This document shows, in pieces, positions 48,594 through 55,479 of a stretch of DNA of 64,000 nt. How positions within the stretch are numbered: position 1 is the stretch's first letter; every line of letters starts with the position of its first letter. A program made the translations under genes and the position numbers. The DNA lies in IMG/VR virus record IMGVR_UViG_3300029893_000001, positions 1 to 64,000 of that record; one strand, given 5' to 3'. The notes under the pieces were generated by a model. The model worked only from the letters and a program-made list of their open reading frames with translations. It was not told where the DNA came from and did not search any database.

Positions 48594-49421
48594 TCAGGCT
48601 CCTATTCCCACCATCTGCTTCCAGCGATCCTCGATCATCTGAGAATAGAGGTGAGACGGTAATCCGTATGCCCCCAACGAGTGGGCATCGTTTGCCTCCA
48701 CCATCAGTGTTGGAGTGCGAATTAGCTCAGGGCGTTCTGGAAAGTTAGCAACCCCTATATCAATAGAAAAAGCGATCTGCGGGATTGCTTTTGCAGTTCT
48801 AAGTATTTTCCGAACCACTGCGGCGTCTGGAAACACGAGCGGGTCGCCTTTATAGTGCCTCAGCCCAACCATCTCTCCATGATGGATGAAAGCCCTGTAT
48901 TCAGAGAGCCATTCAATCACGTGGAGCTTCCACACGCGGAAGTTATCCGGAACATGAGCAATACTAATCAAGTCGGAGAACTTTGAGACGACGAGCCCAG
49001 TGAACGCCTTATGTTCTTGACTCGGCTTAATGAAGCACGGCTTGAAGCCAGGCGATTGAACCGCCTCTTTGACTTTCGATAGTGAAACCTCAACCGGAGG
49101 CCTGTCCATGAACTTCCGAAGGACGTGTGGATACGTCTCGTAACGCGGCGGAGCTACTCCAATTTGCTTCAGGGCAGCCCTTACGTCATTAATGCTTCCG
49201 TGTACGATAGTCTCTGCTGTCAAGCTGAGAGTCTGACCGTGCAACTGTTCAGCGGTGTACGGACGAACTTCGTATCCACGATTGTAGAATCCCTTGAACG
49301 CAAGGTAGGCATTCTCATTAATCCATTCGCCTGCGTCGTCCTTGGGGAGGTAAACGACTGTCACCGGATCTCCACGTGAATTCCTGTTTCGTGTTCGAGT
49401 TCGAAAAACCGCTTCATGCAA
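48594..49421 (-). CDS. ATP-grasp domain protein (R2K/DUF4343-like)
   Basis: FIKP...KAFTG, SEYRAFI, IDIG, VEANDAHSLGAYG. Confidence 0.8.
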   Translation of the reverse strand: MHEAVFRTRTRNRNSRGDPVTVVYLPKDDAGEWINENAYLAFKGFYNRGYEVRPYTAEQLHGQTLSLTAETIVHGSINDVRAALKQIGVAPPRYETYPHVLRKFMDRPPVEVSLSKVKEAVQSPGFKPCFIKPSQEHKAFTGLVVSKFSDLISIAHVPDNFRVWKLHVIEWLSEYRAFIHHGEMVGLRHYKGDPLVFPDAAVVRKILRTAKAIPQIAFSIDIGVANFPERPELIRTPTLMVEANDAHSLGAYGLPSHLYSQMIEDRWKQMVGIGA

Positions 49422-49716
49422 CGCTGTTCGGCCCGTTCCATGGATCTAAAGGCGGTGATAATCTCTTGGAGGTGATCTTTCGCGTACTGCTTTGCAGAAC
49501 GTGCAGACCAGAAAATGTCAAATGTGAGAGTCCTGTTGTGCCTGGTTACACACAAAGACCACTCTTTTCTGCCTCTGTACACAGACGAGGGAGTTCCCTC
49601 AATAGAGAACTCGTACGAATCCCAACCTCCGTCCGGTCCCTCGTGAGTCCAGCGGTACTGAGTCTCTCTTTGAAGAGACCAGACGGGGTTGGAGTGCTTC
49701 TTGGCTTTCTTGCTGC

Positions 49717-50220
49717 TCATTCTGTTGCGATTTCCAGTGCCTCTCGAACTCGCAAATACCCAGAACCTGTCATCGACTTCCGACCACGAGTGGCCATCTT
49801 ATCGACCCTGTTGTTCATAGCAAATGCGTAGCCGAGAGACGGGTCTTGGTGACCCTTTACATGCTCGGTGAGCACTTGGACGCCGCACTTTTGATACAAG
49901 TCTTGGATCCAACCACGAATCCGAATCATCTCTCGATCACGAACTCTGGACCTGAGCGGCCCCTTCCGTGCGTGACGGAGAGCACACTCAGAGTCCGAGC
50001 GTATTCGAAAGGCGTGAATCTCCTCTCCCCATTCACGAACGGCCAAGGATAGACCCATGTGAATGGCGAACAGCTCGGCGTGGTTGGAGCAAGTCACAAG
50101 ATCGCTGGGGCAGGAACCGTAGTGGACGAGGCGGCCTTTGTCGCTCTCAATGTACACAGCCCATCCACCAGACTGATTGTGGTGGTTGTACGAGCCGTCG
50201 GTGTAGAGCGTTACCAACAT
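49717..50220 (-). CDS. rnhA: Ribonuclease HI
   Basis: YTDGS, NHAELFAI, RSDSE, HVKGH and NNRVDKMA catalytic motifs. Confidence 0.88.
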   Translation of the reverse strand: MLVTLYTDGSYNHHNQSGGWAVYIESDKGRLVHYGSCPSDLVTCSNHAELFAIHMGLSLAVREWGEEIHAFRIRSDSECALRHARKGPLRSRVRDREMIRIRGWIQDLYQKCGVQVLTEHVKGHQDPSLGYAFAMNNRVDKMATRGRKSMTGSGYLRVREALEIATE

Positions 50221-50290: not shown

Positions 50291-50325
50291 CCCGCTACGA
50301 TTCAGTATCCATCACGTTCCACAAA
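50291..50325 (-). repeat. Degenerate trailer-end CRISPR repeat
   Basis: CCCGCTAC-GATTCAGTATCCATCACG, same orientation as the array repeats. Confidence 0.75.
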
Positions 50326-50408
50326 AAGAAAAGTCGCATCACAGACATAGCAGCAAGTTACTTTTGGTCAAACCGCAGGGCCTCTGTCGAGGCGAGTTCT
50401 ACTATTCC

Positions 50409-50740
50409 CCCGCTACCGATTCAGCATCCATCGCGGGTTACGACCGTGCTCGCCCGAGCGTCTCGCTGGCACGCCCACTATCCCGCTACCGATTCAGCAT
50501 CCATCGCGGGTTACGACTTCCCAGCGATCGGCCCTCGCTGGGCTCGTTTCGAGCAACCCCGCTACCGATTCAGCATCCATCGCGGGTTACGACCTTGGGC
50601 GAGCGTTACCTACATCGCATGAGGCCCAGCCCCCGCTACCGATTCAGCATCCATCGCGGGTTACGACGACCAACTGAAGAACCTTGTCCCCCATGGAGTT
50701 ACGGCCCGCTACCGATTCAGCATCCATCGCGGGTTACGAC
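50409..50740 (-). CRISPR. CRISPR array, 5 identical 36-bp repeats and 4 spacers (37, 40, 38, 37 nt)
   Basis: Plus-strand repeat CCCGCTACCGATTCAGCATCCATCGCGGGTTACGAC at 50409, 50482, 50558, 50632 and 50705; orientation inferred from the degenerate trailer and the leader/cas side. Confidence 0.97.
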
Positions 50741-50990
50741 GGGTCCCTCAACTCTGCTGTATTTTCAAGGACCTACAGACTGCTTTGCGAGAGGGTCTTG
50801 CAACGTCCTTATTTTCGCGACCCGGGATGGAGACTGAAACGATACCGAGACGCCTACTCAGCCTACGTTCTCGGATGGAATTCCCCTTGATTTTCAAGGG
50901 TCTGAGTACCTTCGCGAGCGGTGCCCAGTGTCTAGCGATCACTGGACCCCTCGCGCTCGGGCCTAAGCGGGAGGCCCTTTATCACAGACG
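50741..50990 (-). ncRNA. Leader plus putative tracrRNA, anti-repeat at 50814-50849
   Basis: The minus-strand transcript pairs with the repeat at 26/36 Watson-Crick plus 4 G-U positions; extra hairpins CCCTTG/CAAGGG and CCAGTG/CACTGG. Confidence 0.72.
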
Positions 50991-52385
50991 TTACGTCTGA
51001 GAAGACTTACCTCGAAGTCTGCCCGCCGAACGCTTAGCGCTGGTTTTGGCATCGGGTAGTGCAGACGGCTTCCCGTCACGGAGAAGCATGTTCCAGACGT
51101 AGATCACGTCTACAGAACGTTCGAGAAGACACTTAGAACACCTGAATGTGGTACCATTTACGTCTTCGTTTACAGTACCGCAATTAGGGCAAGTTCTCGA
51201 ATTGTAGTCAGAAGGGACTACTTCTACCTCCCACCCCTTCTTCTTTGCGGCCCACAAAATGGCTTCCCTAAGCTGCGCCAATGGAAAACTACGAACGATC
51301 TGTTCGACGTGTTTTCCTAGTTCGGGAGCACCATCTTTTGCCGGGTTAGTCCAATCCTCGATGAGGATTCTGGTCACACCGCGGCGTTCACCCAAACGAA
51401 TGGCGTGAGCTGCGACTTCCTGGCATTTGGTTCGAACCCATCGTTCTTCTGCACCTTTGAGCTTGGTGACACGTTCGTAATGGCGTGCGTGACCGTGGCC
51501 TTTGGCTCCTGTGCCTAGCTGCCGGCGATGACTACTCAAAGATCGTAGTCTGGCTTTGTACACATCCTTGTACCGACGGATGTCTTCTCCCGTTTCAAGG
51601 ATCGTAGTGTAAGCTTCCTGTGACCCTTCCCTAGAAATAGCAACAGACAGGAAGTTTCGGACTCCACGATGAAGTGCCATCGTGCGGCCCTTCGAAACCT
51701 CTTCTACCTCAAAGGAATAGGCAACAAAAGCCTGCCACTTTTGCTTTCCATCGTGAGTCTCACGCACCAATCGAAGGTCCCCCATAGAATCTGGATTCTG
51801 AAGGATCCTCTTAATGGCAGCAAATCCACTGGTGTGGTAGGGCCGAACAACAATACGCGTCCACGGGCCCTTCAGAAGCTGTACGCTGAGAACGGCGCTG
51901 CCGTTCTCAGAGGTCAGCTTAACGCCTTGTCCAACGACGTAAATGGGTGACGGCGACTTGAACGAGGGAAGCGACATCGTCCCTTTCCACGCTTCCTTCT
52001 TCCATTTCTGCCAACGAGCGAATGCCGCGTTAGAAAGTCCAAGAACAGGGGAGCTTGATGGCTGAAGCTGACTGAGTTGGTCGTCTCCTGCATAACTCTT
52101 CTTACGGGCCACTCTGTCGGCTGCCTGCCGACGTTCATTCTCCCAGGAGTCTCTAGTTAAACGATAGGAATCGGTGCGTGGATGTAGATCTTTGCCTCCA
52201 GGGCCCAGGCCGTTTCCCTTCTTGTACTTTCCTGCTCGGTCATTCACCTCTAGGTCGGTGATGACCGAATTCAGTACGCGGTGAAGAGGAAGCTGAATAG
52301 TTCTGAGCTGGGATCCCAAGGTATCCCAGTCACAGTCTAACGGCTTAACGACCTCAAGCCGCAGTGTTGCGATGAGCGTTGCCAT
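50991..52385 (-). CDS. cas12f: Cas12f (type V-F/TnpB-derived) effector with RuvC-I Asp->His, probably nuclease-dead
   Basis: LEVVKPLDCDW, G.MSLPSFK, GAKGHG, RuvC-I MALHRGV, RuvC-II ILIEDW, SRTCPNCG..FRCSKC zinc ribbon, RuvC-III SVDVIY; adjacent array. Confidence 0.9.
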   Translation of the reverse strand: MATLIATLRLEVVKPLDCDWDTLGSQLRTIQLPLHRVLNSVITDLEVNDRAGKYKKGNGLGPGGKDLHPRTDSYRLTRDSWENERRQAADRVARKKSYAGDDQLSQLQPSSSPVLGLSNAAFARWQKWKKEAWKGTMSLPSFKSPSPIYVVGQGVKLTSENGSAVLSVQLLKGPWTRIVVRPYHTSGFAAIKRILQNPDSMGDLRLVRETHDGKQKWQAFVAYSFEVEEVSKGRTMALHRGVRNFLSVAISREGSQEAYTTILETGEDIRRYKDVYKARLRSLSSHRRQLGTGAKGHGHARHYERVTKLKGAEERWVRTKCQEVAAHAIRLGERRGVTRILIEDWTNPAKDGAPELGKHVEQIVRSFPLAQLREAILWAAKKKGWEVEVVPSDYNSRTCPNCGTVNEDVNGTTFRCSKCLLERSVDVIYVWNMLLRDGKPSALPDAKTSAKRSAGRLRGKSSQT

Positions 52386-52962
52386 GCTTAGTCTTGCTCT
52401 TCTTTGCCAACTTCTTTTCAGCTCGAAACTTTTTGACTTCTTCCTTCAACAACGCAACCTGTTGACGGAGTCTTTCGTTCTCTTCTCGGAGCTTTTCGTT
52501 TTCCTTTACGAGGACCGAGTACGATTTATTCCCAGACTTCTGTGCAGCACGCACTGTCTGCTGCTCCTTGACAATGCGCTGCGCCTGCGAATCAGTTAGA
52601 TGCCCATTGCTTTTTTGCGCAATTAGGGCTCTATCGATGGCTTCCTTCATTTCGGGAGCGCCCCTAAGACGTCCAACGTGGGCCAAAATCTTGACAGGTG
52701 CCTTTTCAACCACTTCAGGCGGCAGTGTCTTCACGGCACGGCGATAAGATGAAAACCGAGACACGTCTTGTCGATCGCGAAGAAGACCCTGAGTTTCGCA
52801 AAACTTCAGAAAATCCTGTCCGGATCCCTGCCAGAGATGGGTGTGCTCCTCAGCACTTGCCAAGAAATTGTACCACGCCTTTTCAGAATCCAAATACGCC
52901 TGTCTCAGGCGCTTAGCTTCTGTGATGAACTGTTCTGGGGTCATGGAACTAAAATCGTACAT
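52354..52962 (-). CDS. Uncharacterised Cas12f-associated protein with C-terminal coiled coil
   Basis: Overlaps cas12f start by 32 nt; LVKENEKLREENERLRQQVALLKEEV heptads; 19 nt downstream of a promoter motif. Confidence 0.75.
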   Translation of the reverse strand: MYDFSSMTPEQFITEAKRLRQAYLDSEKAWYNFLASAEEHTHLWQGSGQDFLKFCETQGLLRDRQDVSRFSSYRRAVKTLPPEVVEKAPVKILAHVGRLRGAPEMKEAIDRALIAQKSNGHLTDSQAQRIVKEQQTVRAAQKSGNKSYSVLVKENEKLREENERLRQQVALLKEEVKKFRAEKKLAKKSKTKHGNAHRNTAA

Positions 52963-52980
52963 GGGTCACCTCGTATACTA

Positions 52981-52997
52981 CAGTATCGGCAGGGTTC
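52981..52997 (-). promoter_or_regulatory. Repeated phage promoter motif driving the cas operon
   Basis: CAGTATCGGCAGGGTTC. Confidence 0.75.
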
Positions 52998-53199
52998 GAG
53001 TCCTGAAAGAGGATCAATTCTGCTTCCGTCAGAATCATTTCGTCTTCGATTTCTTCGAAGTCTGGGTACGCTTCTTTCGGAAGAGATTGGACGAAGGGAC
53101 GTACATTTTGATTTGGCCGGTCTTCATTCGGCGCTTGCATTCTGGACACGTCTCTGTAGACGTAACAATCCCCGTCACTCCATCGGCAGTAAGACATGA

Positions 53200-55479
53200 C
53201 TACTTCTTCCTGGTGCTCTTCTTACCGCTCTTCTTCGCCGCTGTCTTTTTCGCCCTTTTCTTAGGGGCCTTCTTGGCGGTCCTCTTAGCGGATTTCTTAT
53301 TGGCCACCTTGAAGAACAGTTCTGCCCTAGGAAGTAATTTCTCGTACTCTTCCTTGGTGAGTACTCGAATTCCATCCTTTTCTGTTCTTTCACGCACTGC
53401 CTTGCGCTTCGTTGGATCTGTCATCCATTCAGTGCCGTAGTCGAAGGCCAACTCCACGAGTGTTTCGCCCATGTGAGAAACCTCCCCGACCTTCACCACT
53501 CTAGCTACGGAGTAAAGAGGGATCACGGTATCCCCAGCGTGACATGTCCAGAAACAGTTATGCTCTGGAGGCTGCCCATTATCCTGCCAATGATTGATGG
53601 CATATCGCTCAGCGTCTTCTTTCTTCGCCCAGTACCCCTTGGCCCAAGCAAAATGACCGTCGGTCAACTTTCTGGCGTCGAATTCAATCGCATAGGCGTC
53701 CTCAGGAACCCAACGCTGGGCCTCAATGTGCTTCTTGTGCTTTTCGGTAAAGGTCGGACCGAGGTCAAATCGCTCCACCCAGGCTTCGGCACGACCGGGC
53801 TGTTCTAGCCACCACACGTAATCAGGATCTGCAAAGTCTGCATAGACCTTTGCCAACTCTCGATACCGCTTGACAGCCAACATCATGCGATCTCGAACGT
53901 GGTGGACACCCCTACAACGCGAATCGTCGTGAACATTGGTCCCGAACGAAATAACGGACTCCAACACACGGAGGGCCAGCTTCGCGAACGAGGGAGCGAG
54001 AGGCTCAGACCTAAACAATCCGCTGTAGTTCTCCGAGAACGGGCGCCAGCCACACTGGCGACGAAAAGTAGGAGGATCGATGTCAGGTACAGAAGGGTCT
54101 ACGCAGGACTGCGGAAATCCCTTTTCGTGCCATTTTACCCCGTTTCCAATACTGCAGAGCGTGTGGTCGGCTACTCGCTGCCACGATGAATTTCGCTGGT
54201 CCTCGGTCATTTCTGACCAAGGAATCACCTTTTCGTTGTCACGATAGGCGTTCCTCACGACACCGAACAGGGTGGGCCACCTCCTCACCTGAGCTTGAAC
54301 AAAGGCGTGGGCATTCACCTCCACCTCATCCCAAGACTTCAGAAGATCCTTCACGGGGTCAGGCTCACGCACCCATTCAAATTCAGCGTATACCGTCCCG
54401 TCGTCCAAGTCTCTATCTACGTCGTCGTGATGTTTGAACTTGTAGACTCCGGGCGTTACGTCAATGACTTCAGCGCGCGCAGTTTCCAGCGACCCACCGA
54501 ACTTCTTGGCTCTTCGATGGAACTCGTCGAAGTCGCACAACGAGTACCACCACAAATCAGTACAGATCCCGGCGACACGCTCGCCTTCGAAATTAGGGTC
54601 TTCTTCACGAGCGACCCAATCCGTACCGTCCCAATACTCCTCTGCCGGTTCACTCGCGATCTTGAACTTCTCGTCGGAAATCTTGAAGACTCCGGGGCAA
54701 GTGTTCCCCACGAAGGCGTGAGCCATTCCAACAGCGGCATACGCCTGGGCAGTCTGTCGACAGCCTAGAACAGTGTTCACGCTTTCGATCTCGCCATCGC
54801 CCTCCGGAAGAGGGAACCACTCGCGGAGGTCGTTCGCGACGACAATCTTACCGCTGGGAACGTTTAGCTCCCACTCATTGGGCTCGAACCCGTTAGGCAA
54901 CGCACAAGGCTCGCCGGCAATCCTGATTACCAGACCGTCAGTTTCTAGCGACAATCGCTTAGCGCCACAGTAAGAGCAGCCGTCATGACCAAGGACTCCT
55001 CCGCCGGAACCGAGAGGGATCCAGCGGTTCAACGCCTTCTTGGCCCTAATAGCTTCCTGCAGGTCTGTAGCGTCTTCGTCGGACTTAAATCCGAACAGCC
55101 ACAACTCAGACAGAATGCGCTTCTTGAAGCCAGCGAAATCGTATATGGCAGCACCACTCTTCCAGTGCCCCCTTACATCTACGTCGAGAGATGCGCTCTT
55201 GAGCAAGACCGAGACCTTCAAATGAAGGTCGCGATTTATCTTAGGCAGGCTCTTCTCATCAGGGTCATCCGAATCCTTGAAGAATTCGTGAAGATGACTC
55301 TCTGCGTTGGCAGTGGACAATACAGAAGGATGGGCCTGACGTAGCTCCGATTCGTCATAGATGCCGTCTTCGGTTTCCACGGGCCACTGCGTGGATCCTC
55401 GTGATCCACGAGGCACTGCCACGACCGTGGTCTGCTTCCCGGTCCCCACTACAAGGGCCGTATCTCCAGGCTTAAACAT
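53200..55479 (-). CDS. 759-aa hypothetical protein with histone-H1-like Lys/Ala tail
   Basis: C-terminus KKSAKRTAKKAPKKRAKKTAAKKSGKKSTRKK. Confidence 0.65.
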   Translation of the reverse strand: MFKPGDTALVVGTGKQTTVVAVPRGSRGSTQWPVETEDGIYDESELRQAHPSVLSTANAESHLHEFFKDSDDPDEKSLPKINRDLHLKVSVLLKSASLDVDVRGHWKSGAAIYDFAGFKKRILSELWLFGFKSDEDATDLQEAIRAKKALNRWIPLGSGGGVLGHDGCSYCGAKRLSLETDGLVIRIAGEPCALPNGFEPNEWELNVPSGKIVVANDLREWFPLPEGDGEIESVNTVLGCRQTAQAYAAVGMAHAFVGNTCPGVFKISDEKFKIASEPAEEYWDGTDWVAREEDPNFEGERVAGICTDLWWYSLCDFDEFHRRAKKFGGSLETARAEVIDVTPGVYKFKHHDDVDRDLDDGTVYAEFEWVREPDPVKDLLKSWDEVEVNAHAFVQAQVRRWPTLFGVVRNAYRDNEKVIPWSEMTEDQRNSSWQRVADHTLCSIGNGVKWHEKGFPQSCVDPSVPDIDPPTFRRQCGWRPFSENYSGLFRSEPLAPSFAKLALRVLESVISFGTNVHDDSRCRGVHHVRDRMMLAVKRYRELAKVYADFADPDYVWWLEQPGRAEAWVERFDLGPTFTEKHKKHIEAQRWVPEDAYAIEFDARKLTDGHFAWAKGYWAKKEDAERYAINHWQDNGQPPEHNCFWTCHAGDTVIPLYSVARVVKVGEVSHMGETLVELAFDYGTEWMTDPTKRKAVRERTEKDGIRVLTKEEYEKLLPRAELFFKVANKKSAKRTAKKAPKKRAKKTAAKKSGKKSTRKK

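What the first reader, a model, noticed from the sequence alone, without database searches (positions are those of the whole stretch)
52354..52962. Uncharacterised helical/leucine-zipper gene coupled to the dead Cas12f: candidate new Cas accessory
Seen: it is the first gene after the promoter and overlaps the cas12f start by 32 nt. It has an N-terminal helical region (GQDFLKFCETQGL, reminiscent of small phage HTH-like DNA-binding families), a heptad coiled coil and a basic tail. It does not look like a sigma factor, Cas1/2/4 or a transposase. Inference: it may be an effector recruited by the RNA-guided protein, or an autoregulator of the locus.
Basis: partly seen in the sequence, partly recalled or inferred. 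Interest (0 to 1): 0.8.

Follow-up and report, generated by a model that had tools for sequence, protein, structure and literature searches.

The report
Conserved partner gene of non-cutting phage Cas12
This small phage gene founds an unnamed protein family that almost always sits next to CRISPR Cas12 proteins predicted or known to bind DNA without cutting it, so it is probably a new helper subunit for RNA-guided gene silencing, though its mechanism is untested.

Summary
The ORF at 52354-52962 (-) is real. It encodes 202 aa and overlaps the start of a 464-aa Cas12f-like gene by 32 nt. That gene is followed by a tracrRNA-like region and a five-repeat CRISPR array.

The Cas12f-like protein has His in place of the first RuvC Asp. 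All 41 related protein clusters share this change (40 His, 1 Arg).

The 202-aa protein ("acc") has no Pfam, NCBIfam, PADLOC or PDB sequence match beyond its coiled coil. It belongs to a family of about 69 clusters, all 150-250 aa.

In 15 of 16 distinct loci examined, acc lies next to a Cas12 gene. Thirteen are Cas12f-like, in three different gene arrangements. Two are Cas12m, a separate Cas12 type known to silence without cutting. One locus could not be determined.

The AlphaFold2 model (pLDDT 95-96) shows three parts: an N-terminal helical domain resembling the ParB DNA-binding domain and DUF3102, a four-heptad leucine zipper, and a Lys/Arg-rich tail.

My best reading is a dimeric DNA-binding accessory subunit of cleavage-incompetent phage type V effectors. 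Its association with these effectors is well supported. Binding, interaction and silencing are inferred.

The parts
52354..52962 (-). acc gene: 202-aa accessory protein, founding member of an unannotated family
   Evidence: ORF list. 69 homologous clusters, all full length. AF2 model pLDDT 94.8.
52537..52962 (-). acc residues 1-142: helical domain resembling the ParB DNA-binding domain / DUF3102. Putative helix-turn-helix at H51-57 and H64-79, with conserved W44, G48, R69, R74/R75 and N119.
   Evidence: AF2 N-domain model pLDDT 96.5. VIA-align top hit of 48,161 chains is the ParB DNA-binding domain on parS, 6s6h_B, Z 5.8, 99 residues aligned. ESM Atlas TM 0.57-0.61 to ParB-family models. Foldseek hits to DUF3102, ParB HTH and pGP6-D. 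Conserved columns.
52408..52527 (-). acc residues 146-185: leucine zipper (L151, L158, L165, L172), presumed dimerisation helix
   Evidence: Single long helix H148-201. Heptad leucines are 78-97 % conserved. Weak coiled-coil / bZIP / HALZ Pfam hits occur in up to 20 of the 40 aligned members.
52357..52407 (-). acc residues 186-202: Lys/Arg-rich tail
   Evidence: Sequence. Median net charge of the last 20 residues across the family is +5.
50991..52385 (-). Cas12f-like effector, 464 aa, with a His-Glu-Asp RuvC triad (H239 codon 51669-51671; E343 51357-51359; D426 51108-51110). Predicted to bind but not cut DNA.
   Evidence: PDB sequence hits to AsCas12f (8j12, 7wju), E 1e-20. Pfam Cas12f1-like_TNB. 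PADLOC Cas12u3/Cas12f, E 1e-36. His/Arg at RuvC-I in 41 of 41 related clusters.
50745..50990 (-). tracrRNA-like non-coding region, with a full-length anti-repeat at 50814-50850
   Evidence: Nucleotide conservation with L005 and L008. Predicted duplex with the repeat is -45 kcal/mol against -31 +/- 3 for shuffled repeats. The anti-repeat co-varies with the repeat in L005 and L008.
50369..50740 (-). CRISPR mini-array: five identical 36-nt repeats (first bases at 50740, 50667, 50593, 50517, 50444) with spacers S1-S4 of 37-40 nt, plus the stretch after the last repeat, read here as S5 with an arbitrary 40-nt cut. No cas1/2/4 nearby.
   Evidence: The spacers have no match in the window, IMG/VR, INPHARED phages or (S4) GTDB genomes.
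52949..53197 (-). Upstream 82-aa ORF that overlaps the acc start by 14 nt. It shows that acc is not promoter-proximal.
   Evidence: Weak homolog directly upstream of acc in L002 (44.6 % over 65 aa).

Best explanation
The gene encodes a dedicated accessory subunit ('acc') of phage-borne type V CRISPR effectors that bind DNA but do not cut it.

acc has three parts: an N-terminal helical domain shaped like the DNA-binding domain of ParB (but without ParB's CTP-binding head), a four-heptad leucine zipper, and a Lys/Arg-rich tail.

Proposed mechanism:
1. acc is made together with the His-Glu-Asp Cas12f-like protein from overlapping reading frames.
2. It dimerises through the zipper.
3. At sites chosen by the crRNA/tracrRNA-loaded effector, it binds the flanking duplex DNA and probably the effector itself.
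4. This turns a single R-loop roadblock into a more stable, or bridged, nucleoprotein complex that silences genes of the host or of competing mobile elements.

Shown here: the gene and its family; the near-obligate adjacency to Cas12f-like and Cas12m genes; co-divergence with the effector; the fold resemblance; the intact guide-RNA apparatus.

Inferred: dimerisation, DNA binding, contact with the effector, enhancement of silencing, and the inability of the effector to cut DNA.
For: Linkage with Cas12 genes:
- 15 of 16 distinct loci carry a Cas12 gene next to acc.
- acc lies immediately upstream of a Cas12f-like gene (from a 35-nt overlap to a 50-nt gap) in the window, L001-L006, L008, L010, L011, L012-14 and GenBank phage Rctr197k.
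- acc is followed by a 222-nt gap and then Cas12f-like in L018. Cas12f-like is followed by a 219-nt gap and then acc in L019.
- Cas12m is followed by acc with a 1-4 nt overlap in L015 and L022.
- Loci fetched starting from the Cas12f protein also carry acc (L008, L010).

The partners look like binders, not cutters:
- RuvC-I is His or Arg in all 41 related Cas12f-like clusters, inside a conserved MA[LV]HRG motif.
- Cas12m2 has a His-Asp-Asp site and silences by tight binding without cleavage (PMC10442227).

Co-divergence: pairwise identities of acc and the Cas12f-like protein correlate, r = 0.76. A related study reported R2 0.78 for the true partner sigma-E and 0.19 for the autoregulatory HTH (PMC13472631).

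Fold: searches point to ParB DNA-binding domain / DUF3102 / pGP6-D. The zipper and basic tail are conserved.

The guide apparatus is intact and co-varying.

Precedent: in phage VIPR silencers, small predicted DNA-binding Vap proteins enhance silencing or are required for it (10.64898/2026.04.26.720920; 10.64898/2026.10.15.759431).
Against: - There is no direct evidence of DNA binding, dimerisation or contact with the effector. No complex model could be built with the tools available.
- The structural matches are weak by each tool's own standards (VIA Z 5.8, Foldseek E 6e-3 to 0.1, TM 0.36-0.61). There is no sequence-level match to ParB HTH or DUF3102.
- The N-domain is on average slightly acidic (median pI 5.9), which is unusual for a non-specific DNA binder.
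- Adjacency and co-divergence also follow from simple co-inheritance of a two-gene module.
- Characterised Cas12m and dCas12-type repressors work without such a partner.
- No spacer target was found, so silencing of any particular gene is not shown.
- One locus (L016) could not be resolved.
Confidence: 0.5

Rival explanations
1. acc is a sequence-specific transcription factor that autoregulates the acc-cas12f-CRISPR operon. On this reading it works like Aca proteins of anti-CRISPR operons, or like the HTH proteins of dCas12f-sigmaE loci, and does not take part in targeting.
For: The architecture of an HTH-like domain plus a dimerising zipper is typical of repressors. HTH proteins next to dCas12f in Bacteroidota bind inverted repeats upstream of their own gene (PMC13472631). 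Some loci have an inverted repeat near acc (L005, L019).
Against: Several loci, including the window, have no intergenic region upstream of acc: the window, L002, L003, L004, L024, L015 and L022. No shared or consistent operator-like palindrome was found. The putative recognition helix (R69, Y/F70, R74, R75) is conserved across loci whose flanking DNA is unrelated. Co-divergence with the effector is strong (r = 0.76). Translational coupling is maintained with two different Cas12 families.
Confidence: 0.2
2. acc is an adaptor that recruits another machine to the RNA-guided site, for example host RNA polymerase, a nuclease, or a replication or partition factor. This would resemble sigma-E recruitment by dCas12f.
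For: The linkage evidence is the same as for the best explanation. The near-neutral N-domain could be a protein-binding surface. There is precedent for dead Cas12f recruiting a partner protein (PMC13472631).
Against: No third gene is conserved in the neighbourhood. There is no similarity to sigma factors or any enzyme. The fold matches are to DNA-binding domains.
Confidence: 0.12
3. acc acts on the guide RNA rather than on target DNA. It would help pre-crRNA/tracrRNA processing, folding or loading, using its basic tail and HTH-like domain as RNA-binding elements.
For: The C-terminal region is very basic. The RuvC site is altered, so crRNA maturation might need help. Some phage HTH proteins bind RNA as well as DNA (Birkholz 2024, cited in PMC13472631).
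Against: The family serves both a tracrRNA-dependent Cas12f-like system and Cas12m. [quoted passage not shown] The repeats differ completely between loci, so a common RNA ligand is unlikely.
Confidence: 0.08
4. acc is an unrelated phage DNA-maintenance protein (a ParB/DUF3102-type partition or replication factor). On this reading it merely travels with the CRISPR module by conserved synteny.
For: Structural relatives (ParB, SopB, DUF3102, Chlamydia pGP6-D, the Borrelia plasmid-partition N-domain) belong to plasmid and phage maintenance systems.
Against: The surrounding genes differ between loci, and only the acc-Cas12 pair is kept. The pair persists through changes of gene order and of Cas12 family. 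No ParA-like ATPase lies nearby. There are no homologs in 72,556 plasmids.
Confidence: 0.05

Closest known systems
ParB/Spo0J (and SopB, KorB-type) centromere-binding proteins
   Same: The helical DNA-binding-domain fold is the best structural match. VIA-align's top hit is 6s6h_B, the ParB DNA-binding domain on parS, with SopB-DNA (3mkw_B) also listed. ESM Atlas gives TM 0.57-0.61. The order of parts is also alike: a DNA-binding domain followed by a C-terminal dimerisation element with a Lys-rich surface (the latter from general knowledge of ParB).
   Different: acc has no ParB_N CTP-binding domain and no Pfam ParB_N or HTH_ParB match. No ParA partner or parS-like repeats were seen. Dimerisation would be through a leucine zipper. 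acc is linked to Cas12 genes instead.
DUF3102 (PF11300), Chlamydia pGP6-D and the Borrelia Plasmid_parti_N proteins
   Same: These are the best Foldseek and language-model neighbours, and they are also small helical proteins of phages and plasmids.
   Different: There is no sequence-level match. Those families have no known biochemical function, and only three library papers mention DUF3102. None is reported next to Cas12.
dCas12f-sigmaE RNA-guided transcription systems (Bacteroidota)
   Same: A Cas12f-like protein with a mutated RuvC site is encoded in an operon with a small co-evolving partner protein (PMC13472631).
   Different: The partner here is not a sigma factor. The effector keeps full length, a CRISPR array and a tracrRNA, and has a single Asp-to-His change rather than a C-terminal truncation. 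It is closest to AsCas12f (V-U3-like) and is phage-borne.
Cas12m (type V-M) transcriptional silencers
   Same: They have a His at RuvC-I (the His-Asp-Asp site of Cas12m2) and silence by tight DNA binding without cutting (PMC10442227). Two acc family members are translationally coupled to Cas12m genes.
   Different: Characterised Cas12m systems act alone, and no acc homolog was found on plasmids. The window's effector is Cas12f-like, not Cas12m.
VIPR systems with Vap accessory proteins
   Same: They are phage-encoded RNA-guided DNA-binding silencers with a small, predicted DNA-binding accessory gene that enhances silencing or is required for it (10.64898/2026.04.26.720920; 10.64898/2026.10.15.759431).
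   Different: The RNA-guided protein is unrelated (a RAMP-like Vipr that forms filaments on GGYNN vrRNAs). There are no CRISPR repeats. No evidence was found here that Vap and acc are homologous.
TldR (TnpB-like nuclease-dead repressors)
   Same: They are phage-associated, RuvC-inactive TnpB/Cas12-family proteins used for RNA-guided repression (10.1101/2023.11.30.569447).
   Different: TldRs use a single omega-like guide. As described, their conserved neighbours are the genes they regulate or replace (fliC, oppF), not a DNA-binding partner.

Membership tests
ParB/Spo0J family | N-terminal ParB_N (PF02195) CTP-binding domain | tested here: not met
   No Pfam or NCBIfam hit. The model begins directly with the long helix H9-38.
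ParB/Spo0J family | HTH DNA-binding domain recognisable by sequence (PF17762 HTH_ParB) | tested here: not met
   No hit for any of the 40 family members at E <= 0.05. A profile of the N-domain finds no PDB ParB sequence.
ParB/Spo0J family | ParB DNA-binding-domain fold | tested here: inconclusive
   The top VIA-align hit of 48,161 chains is the ParB DNA-binding domain 6s6h_B, but at Z 5.8, below the tool's trust level. ESM Atlas TM 0.57-0.61 by query. Foldseek PDB hit 7bnr_B, E 1.9.
ParB/Spo0J family | Binding to parS-type centromere repeats, and a ParA partner | not testable with these tools
   No ParA-like gene lies in the flanks examined. DNA binding needs an experiment.
DUF3102 (PF11300) | Match to the Pfam model above its threshold | tested here: not met
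   No hit at E <= 1 for the window protein, nor at E <= 0.05 for the 40 members. The only evidence is structural or language-model similarity: Foldseek probability 0.99-1.0 with E 6e-3 to 6e-2, and Atlas score 0.92.
ECF sigma factor (partner of dCas12f-sigmaE systems) | Sigma-70 region 2 and region 4 domains | tested here: not met
   No sigma family appears in Pfam or NCBIfam, and none among the fold-search matches.
bZIP transcription factors | Basic DNA-contact region immediately N-terminal to the leucine zipper | tested here: not met
   The heptad leucines are present, but the basic stretch lies C-terminal to the zipper. The bZIP/HALZ hits are below threshold and cover the zipper only.
Known Cas accessory or defence proteins (Cas1, Cas2, Cas4, TniQ and others) | Match to a PADLOC or NCBIfam Cas model | tested here: not met
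   PADLOC gave 0 families. NCBIfam gave only sub-threshold coiled-coil noise.
Autoregulatory HTH (Aca-like) of the locus | Inverted-repeat operator in a promoter region just upstream of its own gene | tested here: not met
   There is no intergenic region in the window or in six other loci. No repeat was found in 4 of 8 upstream regions, and no shared motif in the rest.
Type V-F CRISPR-Cas (for the neighbouring effector) | Cas12f-like protein with a TNB zinc ribbon, a tracrRNA and a CRISPR array | tested here: met
Type V-F CRISPR-Cas (for the neighbouring effector) | Canonical Asp-Glu-Asp RuvC triad (a DNA-cutting enzyme) | tested here: not met
   His239 replaces the first Asp. The position is His/Arg in 41 of 41 related clusters.
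VIPR/Vap systems | Adjacent vipr (RAMP-like) gene and GGYNN vrRNA repeats | tested here: not met
   The neighbour is Cas12f-like and the repeats are 36-nt CRISPR repeats.

The most novel reading that the evidence does not exclude
The RNA-guided, non-cutting Cas12 proteins may act as programmable loading sites (a guide-specified 'parS') for a headless ParB-like protein. That protein would then bridge or coat neighbouring DNA. This would give phages long-range silencing, or physical tethering or sequestration, of a chosen DNA molecule: a mode of CRISPR action that is neither cleavage nor a simple roadblock.
Probability: 0.12. Interest if true: 0.9.

Novelty: new variant of a known kind. Interest (0 to 1): 0.72.

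Why it matters
Natural RNA-guided DNA binders that do not cut (Cas12m, TldR, dCas12f-sigmaE, VIPR) are a fast-growing topic. What distinguishes these systems is the partner each one brings to the target.

Here an uncharacterised protein family is tied to two separate lineages of such effectors in uncultivated, mostly very large phages. This has three consequences:
- It defines a new Cas-associated gene family.
- It points to a whole clade of His-Glu-Asp Cas12f-like proteins with a conserved MA[LV]HRG motif.
- It offers a compact two-protein module (about 200 + 460 aa) that could be tested as a natural CRISPR-interference enhancer.

It also shows that a GenBank phage (Rctr197k) already carries the module, annotated as 'hypothetical protein' and 'transposase-like protein'.

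Tried and rejected
**Sequence searches of acc**
- Pfam, NCBIfam, PADLOC, PHROGs and PDB sequences returned only coiled-coil noise.
- A profile of the N-domain against PDB sequences found nothing.

**Fold searches**
- Foldseek PDB with the full model and with the N-domain model gave no significant hit.
- VIA-align with the full model was swamped by the long helix.

**Finding more loci**
- The search for related loci with the acc alignment failed because no stretch is conserved enough.
- The same search with the Cas12f alignment found nothing in GTDB genomes and only the window's own contig in IMG/VR.

**Spacer targets**
- There is no match within the window at up to 11 mismatches in 32 nt.
- There are no exact 23-25-nt matches for S1-S4 in IMG/VR apart from the array itself.
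- S4 has no match in GTDB genomes.
- The whole array has no blastn match in INPHARED phages.

**Other checks**
- No acc-Cas12 fusion protein exists among 41 Cas12f-like clusters.
- No promoter and no operator-like palindrome was found upstream of acc.
- Rfam found nothing relevant.
- No RNA sequencing run holds the locus, so expression could not be checked and read laying was not used.
- A sigma-factor identity for acc was considered and rejected, as was a bZIP identity (see the membership tests).
- VIPR/Vap was considered as a possible identity and rejected, because the effector and the repeats are different.
Full report
**1. What is at the coordinates**

The minus strand carries an ATG-initiated ORF at 52354..52962 encoding 202 aa. 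A GAGGTG Shine-Dalgarno-like sequence lies 8 nt upstream of the start. Its last 32 nt overlap, in another frame, the start of a 464-aa ORF at 50991..52385.

The 464-aa protein is Cas12f-like:
- Pfam Cas12f1-like_TNB, E 6e-9.
- PADLOC Cas12u3 and Cas12f, E about 1e-36.
- Best solved relatives are the AsCas12f entries 8j12, 8dzj and 7wju, E about 1e-20.

In those alignments the first RuvC aspartate (MGIDLGV in AsCas12f) is a histidine here (MALHRGV, H239). The RuvC-II glutamate (E343) and RuvC-III aspartate (D426) are kept.

Downstream of the gene, on the same strand, lie two RNA features:
- A stretch of about 250 nt that is conserved at the nucleotide level in related loci. It contains a 36-nt anti-repeat at 50814-50850. 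The predicted duplex with the repeat is -45 kcal/mol, against -31 +/- 3 for shuffled repeats. The anti-repeat co-varies with the repeat in two other loci.
- A five-repeat CRISPR array.

No cas1, cas2 or cas4 gene is present. GC content is the same as in the flanking genes.

The window comes from a phage contig of about 392-403 kb found in subsurface and rock metagenomes.

**2.

The overlap, the helical N-terminal region, the heptad coiled coil and the basic tail are all there.

The statement that this is the first gene after a promoter does not hold:
- An 82-aa ORF (52949..53197) overlaps the start of the gene by 14 nt and abuts a 759-aa ORF.
- That small ORF has a weak homolog in the same position in locus L002.
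- No sigma-70-like promoter was found on that strand.

**3. The protein family**

The protein, called acc here, has no match beyond coiled-coil noise in Pfam, NCBIfam, PADLOC, PHROGs or PDB sequences.

An exhaustive phmmer search of 1.84 billion representative proteins found 69 clusters at E<1e-3. They are 149-249 aa long. Nearly all match a family profile over almost its whole length, at 93-252 bits.

Conserved positions are W44, G48, R69, a Y/F at 70, R74/R75, N119 within a TNGTxISEQSA motif, and leucines at 151, 158, 165 and 172.

The part after residue 140 has a median pI of 10.2. The N-domain has a median pI of about 5.9.

**4.

I examined 16 distinct loci. They are grouped below by arrangement.

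*acc immediately upstream of a Cas12f-like gene (11 loci):*

| Locus | Junction |
|---|---|
| window | 32-nt overlap |
| L001 | 35-nt overlap |
| L002 | 29-nt overlap |
| L003, L004 | 4-nt overlap |
| L005/L006 | 7-nt gap |
| L008, L010 | adjacent; found by searching with Cas12f, not acc |
| L011 | 34-nt gap |
| L012-L014 | 4-nt overlap, with two tandem acc paralogs |
| L024 = GenBank 'Virus Rctr197k' KX853510 | 50-nt gap; genes annotated 'hypothetical protein' and 'transposase-like protein', followed by an annotated CRISPR |

*Other arrangements, in the more divergent branch of the acc tree:*

| Locus | Arrangement |
|---|---|
| L018 | acc, 222-nt gap, Cas12f-like fragment |
| L019 | Cas12f-like, 219-nt gap, acc |
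| L015 | acc overlaps by 1 nt the end of a Cas12m-like gene |
| L022 | acc overlaps by 4 nt the end of a full-length 591-aa Cas12m (PDB 23vw E 7e-48; PADLOC Cas12u1 E 7e-89), followed by the start of a repeat array |
| L016 | about 1 kb; could not be resolved |

That is 15 of 16 loci with a Cas12 neighbour. Nothing else in the flanks is conserved between loci.

Pairwise identities of acc and of the Cas12f-like protein correlate at r = 0.76 (28 pairs). The value is 0.74 after removing the close relatives. acc evolves faster than the effector.

No acc homolog occurs in 72,556 plasmids. None was seen fused to Cas12.

**5. The partner proteins**

All eight full-length Cas12f-like partners and Rctr197k lack the RuvC-I aspartate. 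Among 41 clusters related to the window protein (35-100 % identity), the position is His in 40 and Arg in one. It sits within a conserved MA[LV]HRG motif, while RuvC-II and RuvC-III are largely kept. A strictly conserved His-Arg-Gly argues for a selected, non-canonical site rather than decay.

Cas12m2 has a His-Asp-Asp site, binds one Mg2+, does not cut double-stranded DNA, and silences transcription by tight binding (PMC10442227).

By that analogy the window protein is predicted to be a binder, not a cutter. This is an inference and was not tested here.

**6. Structure of acc**

AlphaFold2 with the family alignment gives a confident model. pLDDT is 94.8 for the full length and 96.5 for residues 1-140. 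The model has seven helices in residues 9-142 and one long helix from 148 to 201.

Searches point repeatedly, but weakly, to one fold class:

| Search | Result |
|---|---|
| Foldseek, AlphaFold DB clusters | DUF3102, 'ParB/Spo0J HTH domain-containing', DUF222, pGP6-D; probability about 1, E 8e-3 to 0.1, TM 0.36-0.50 |
| Foldseek, BFVD viral models | DUF3102 phage proteins |
| Foldseek, Swiss-Prot models | Chlamydia pGP6-D |
| ESM Atlas, residues 1-142 | ParB-family models, TM 0.57-0.61 by query; DUF3102 by features, 0.92 |
| VIA-align, 48,161 PDB chains, N-domain model | Top hit is the ParB DNA-binding domain bound to parS (6s6h_B, Z 5.8, 99 of 140 residues); SopB-DNA is also listed |
| Foldseek, PDB | No significant hit |

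The Z-score is below the level the tool advises trusting for helical proteins. I therefore describe the domain as ParB-DNA-binding-domain-like or DUF3102-like, not as a member of either family.

The ParB CTP-binding head is absent.

**7. How it most likely works**

The combination is:
- an HTH-like domain with a conserved arginine-rich helix;
- a classical four-heptad zipper;
- a Lys/Arg tail;
- translational coupling to the effector;
- co-divergence with the effector;
- recurrence with two independent lineages of binding-only Cas12 proteins.

This is best explained by a dimeric DNA-binding accessory subunit that acts with the guide-loaded effector on target DNA. It would stabilise or extend the silencing complex.

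Cas12f enzymes work as dimers on one guide (established for Un1Cas12f and AsCas12f). A dimeric partner would match that symmetry, although this point is speculation.

Phage VIPR systems provide a functional precedent. Their small predicted DNA-binding Vap proteins enhance silencing, and Vap1 is required in natural infection (10.64898/2026.04.26.720920; 10.64898/2026.10.15.759431).

What is shown here is the association and the architecture. Binding, interaction and effect are inferred.

**8. Rivals**

*Autoregulatory repressor.* This is the main alternative. HTH proteins next to dCas12f-sigmaE behave this way (PMC13472631). Several points count against it:
- Many loci lack any upstream intergenic region.
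- No consistent operator-like palindrome was found.
- The putative recognition helix is conserved across unrelated flanks.
- Co-divergence with the effector is strong.

*Other rivals.* Recruitment of a third factor, a role in guide-RNA biogenesis, and mere synteny of a phage maintenance protein are less likely. The reasons are given in the rivals list.

**9. Comparison with known systems, and novelty**

The system works like other exapted, non-cutting RNA-guided DNA binders that come with a partner (dCas12f-sigmaE, VIPR-Vap). It differs in three respects:
- The partner family is unannotated, and none of my literature searches found it described.
- The effector clade is a full-length, CRISPR- and tracrRNA-associated His-Glu-Asp Cas12f-like protein.
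- The host elements are large uncultivated phages.

I rate it a new variant of a known kind.

**10. Limits**

- Context look-ups were capped, so only 16 of about 70 clusters were examined.
- No protein-complex prediction, expression data or spacer targets were obtainable.

Noticed in passing
window 50291-50325 (-): A degenerate sixth CRISPR repeat (8 substitutions and 1 deletion against the 36-nt repeat) lies about 85 nt beyond the last full repeat and about 70 nt upstream of the RNase H gene start (50220). It could be a decayed array end or a repeat-like regulatory RNA.
   Followed up: partly
window 48594-50220 (-): Directly downstream of the array lie an RNase H gene (49717-50220, Pfam RNase_H E 2e-12) and an ATP-grasp R2K-family gene (48594-49421, E 2e-30). 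They are not conserved next to the module in other loci.
   Followed up: partly
L012:951-2411 (also L013, L014): Two tandem acc paralogs (205 aa each, 41.5 % identical) precede one Cas12f-like gene. This locus has no array directly downstream of the effector. A heterodimeric zipper pair is conceivable.
   Followed up: partly
L005:7270-7672 and L008:2386-2782: The two arrays have the same period pattern (71, 73, 72, 74, 71) but different repeat and spacer sequences, and the L008 repeats are degenerate (78-97 %). The arrays seem to drift by point mutation rather than turn over by spacer acquisition.
   Followed up: partly
L024 = GenBank KX853510.1, 119281-121844: The deposited phage 'Virus Rctr197k' (from a methane-oxidising/anammox enrichment culture) carries the same acc, His-RuvC Cas12f-like gene, tracr-like region and 4-repeat CRISPR module. 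Its genes are annotated 'hypothetical protein' and 'transposase-like protein'.
   Followed up: yes
Cas12f-like clade, P0072-P0112: The motif MA[LV]HRG around the substituted RuvC-I position is almost invariant in 41 clusters down to 35 % identity. This suggests a selected non-canonical site, as in the His-Asp-Asp site of Cas12m2.
   Followed up: partly
window 53200-55479 (-): A 759-aa ORF of unknown function has a Lys-rich C-terminal tail. It matches only phrog_33592 (E 1.5e-8) and lies two genes upstream of acc in the same gene string.
   Followed up: no
L016:863-1087: The gene fragment after acc in the one unresolved locus starts with a Ser/Ala-rich stretch. It then reads VRVVQFSILYDGDEE, loosely like the Cas12f-like N-terminal motif LRLEVVKPLDGDWD. 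This is suggestive only.
   Followed up: partly
window 1-64000: No tRNA genes occur in the 64-kb window. Nearly all long ORFs from about 48.6 to 57.6 kb are on the minus strand.
   Followed up: no
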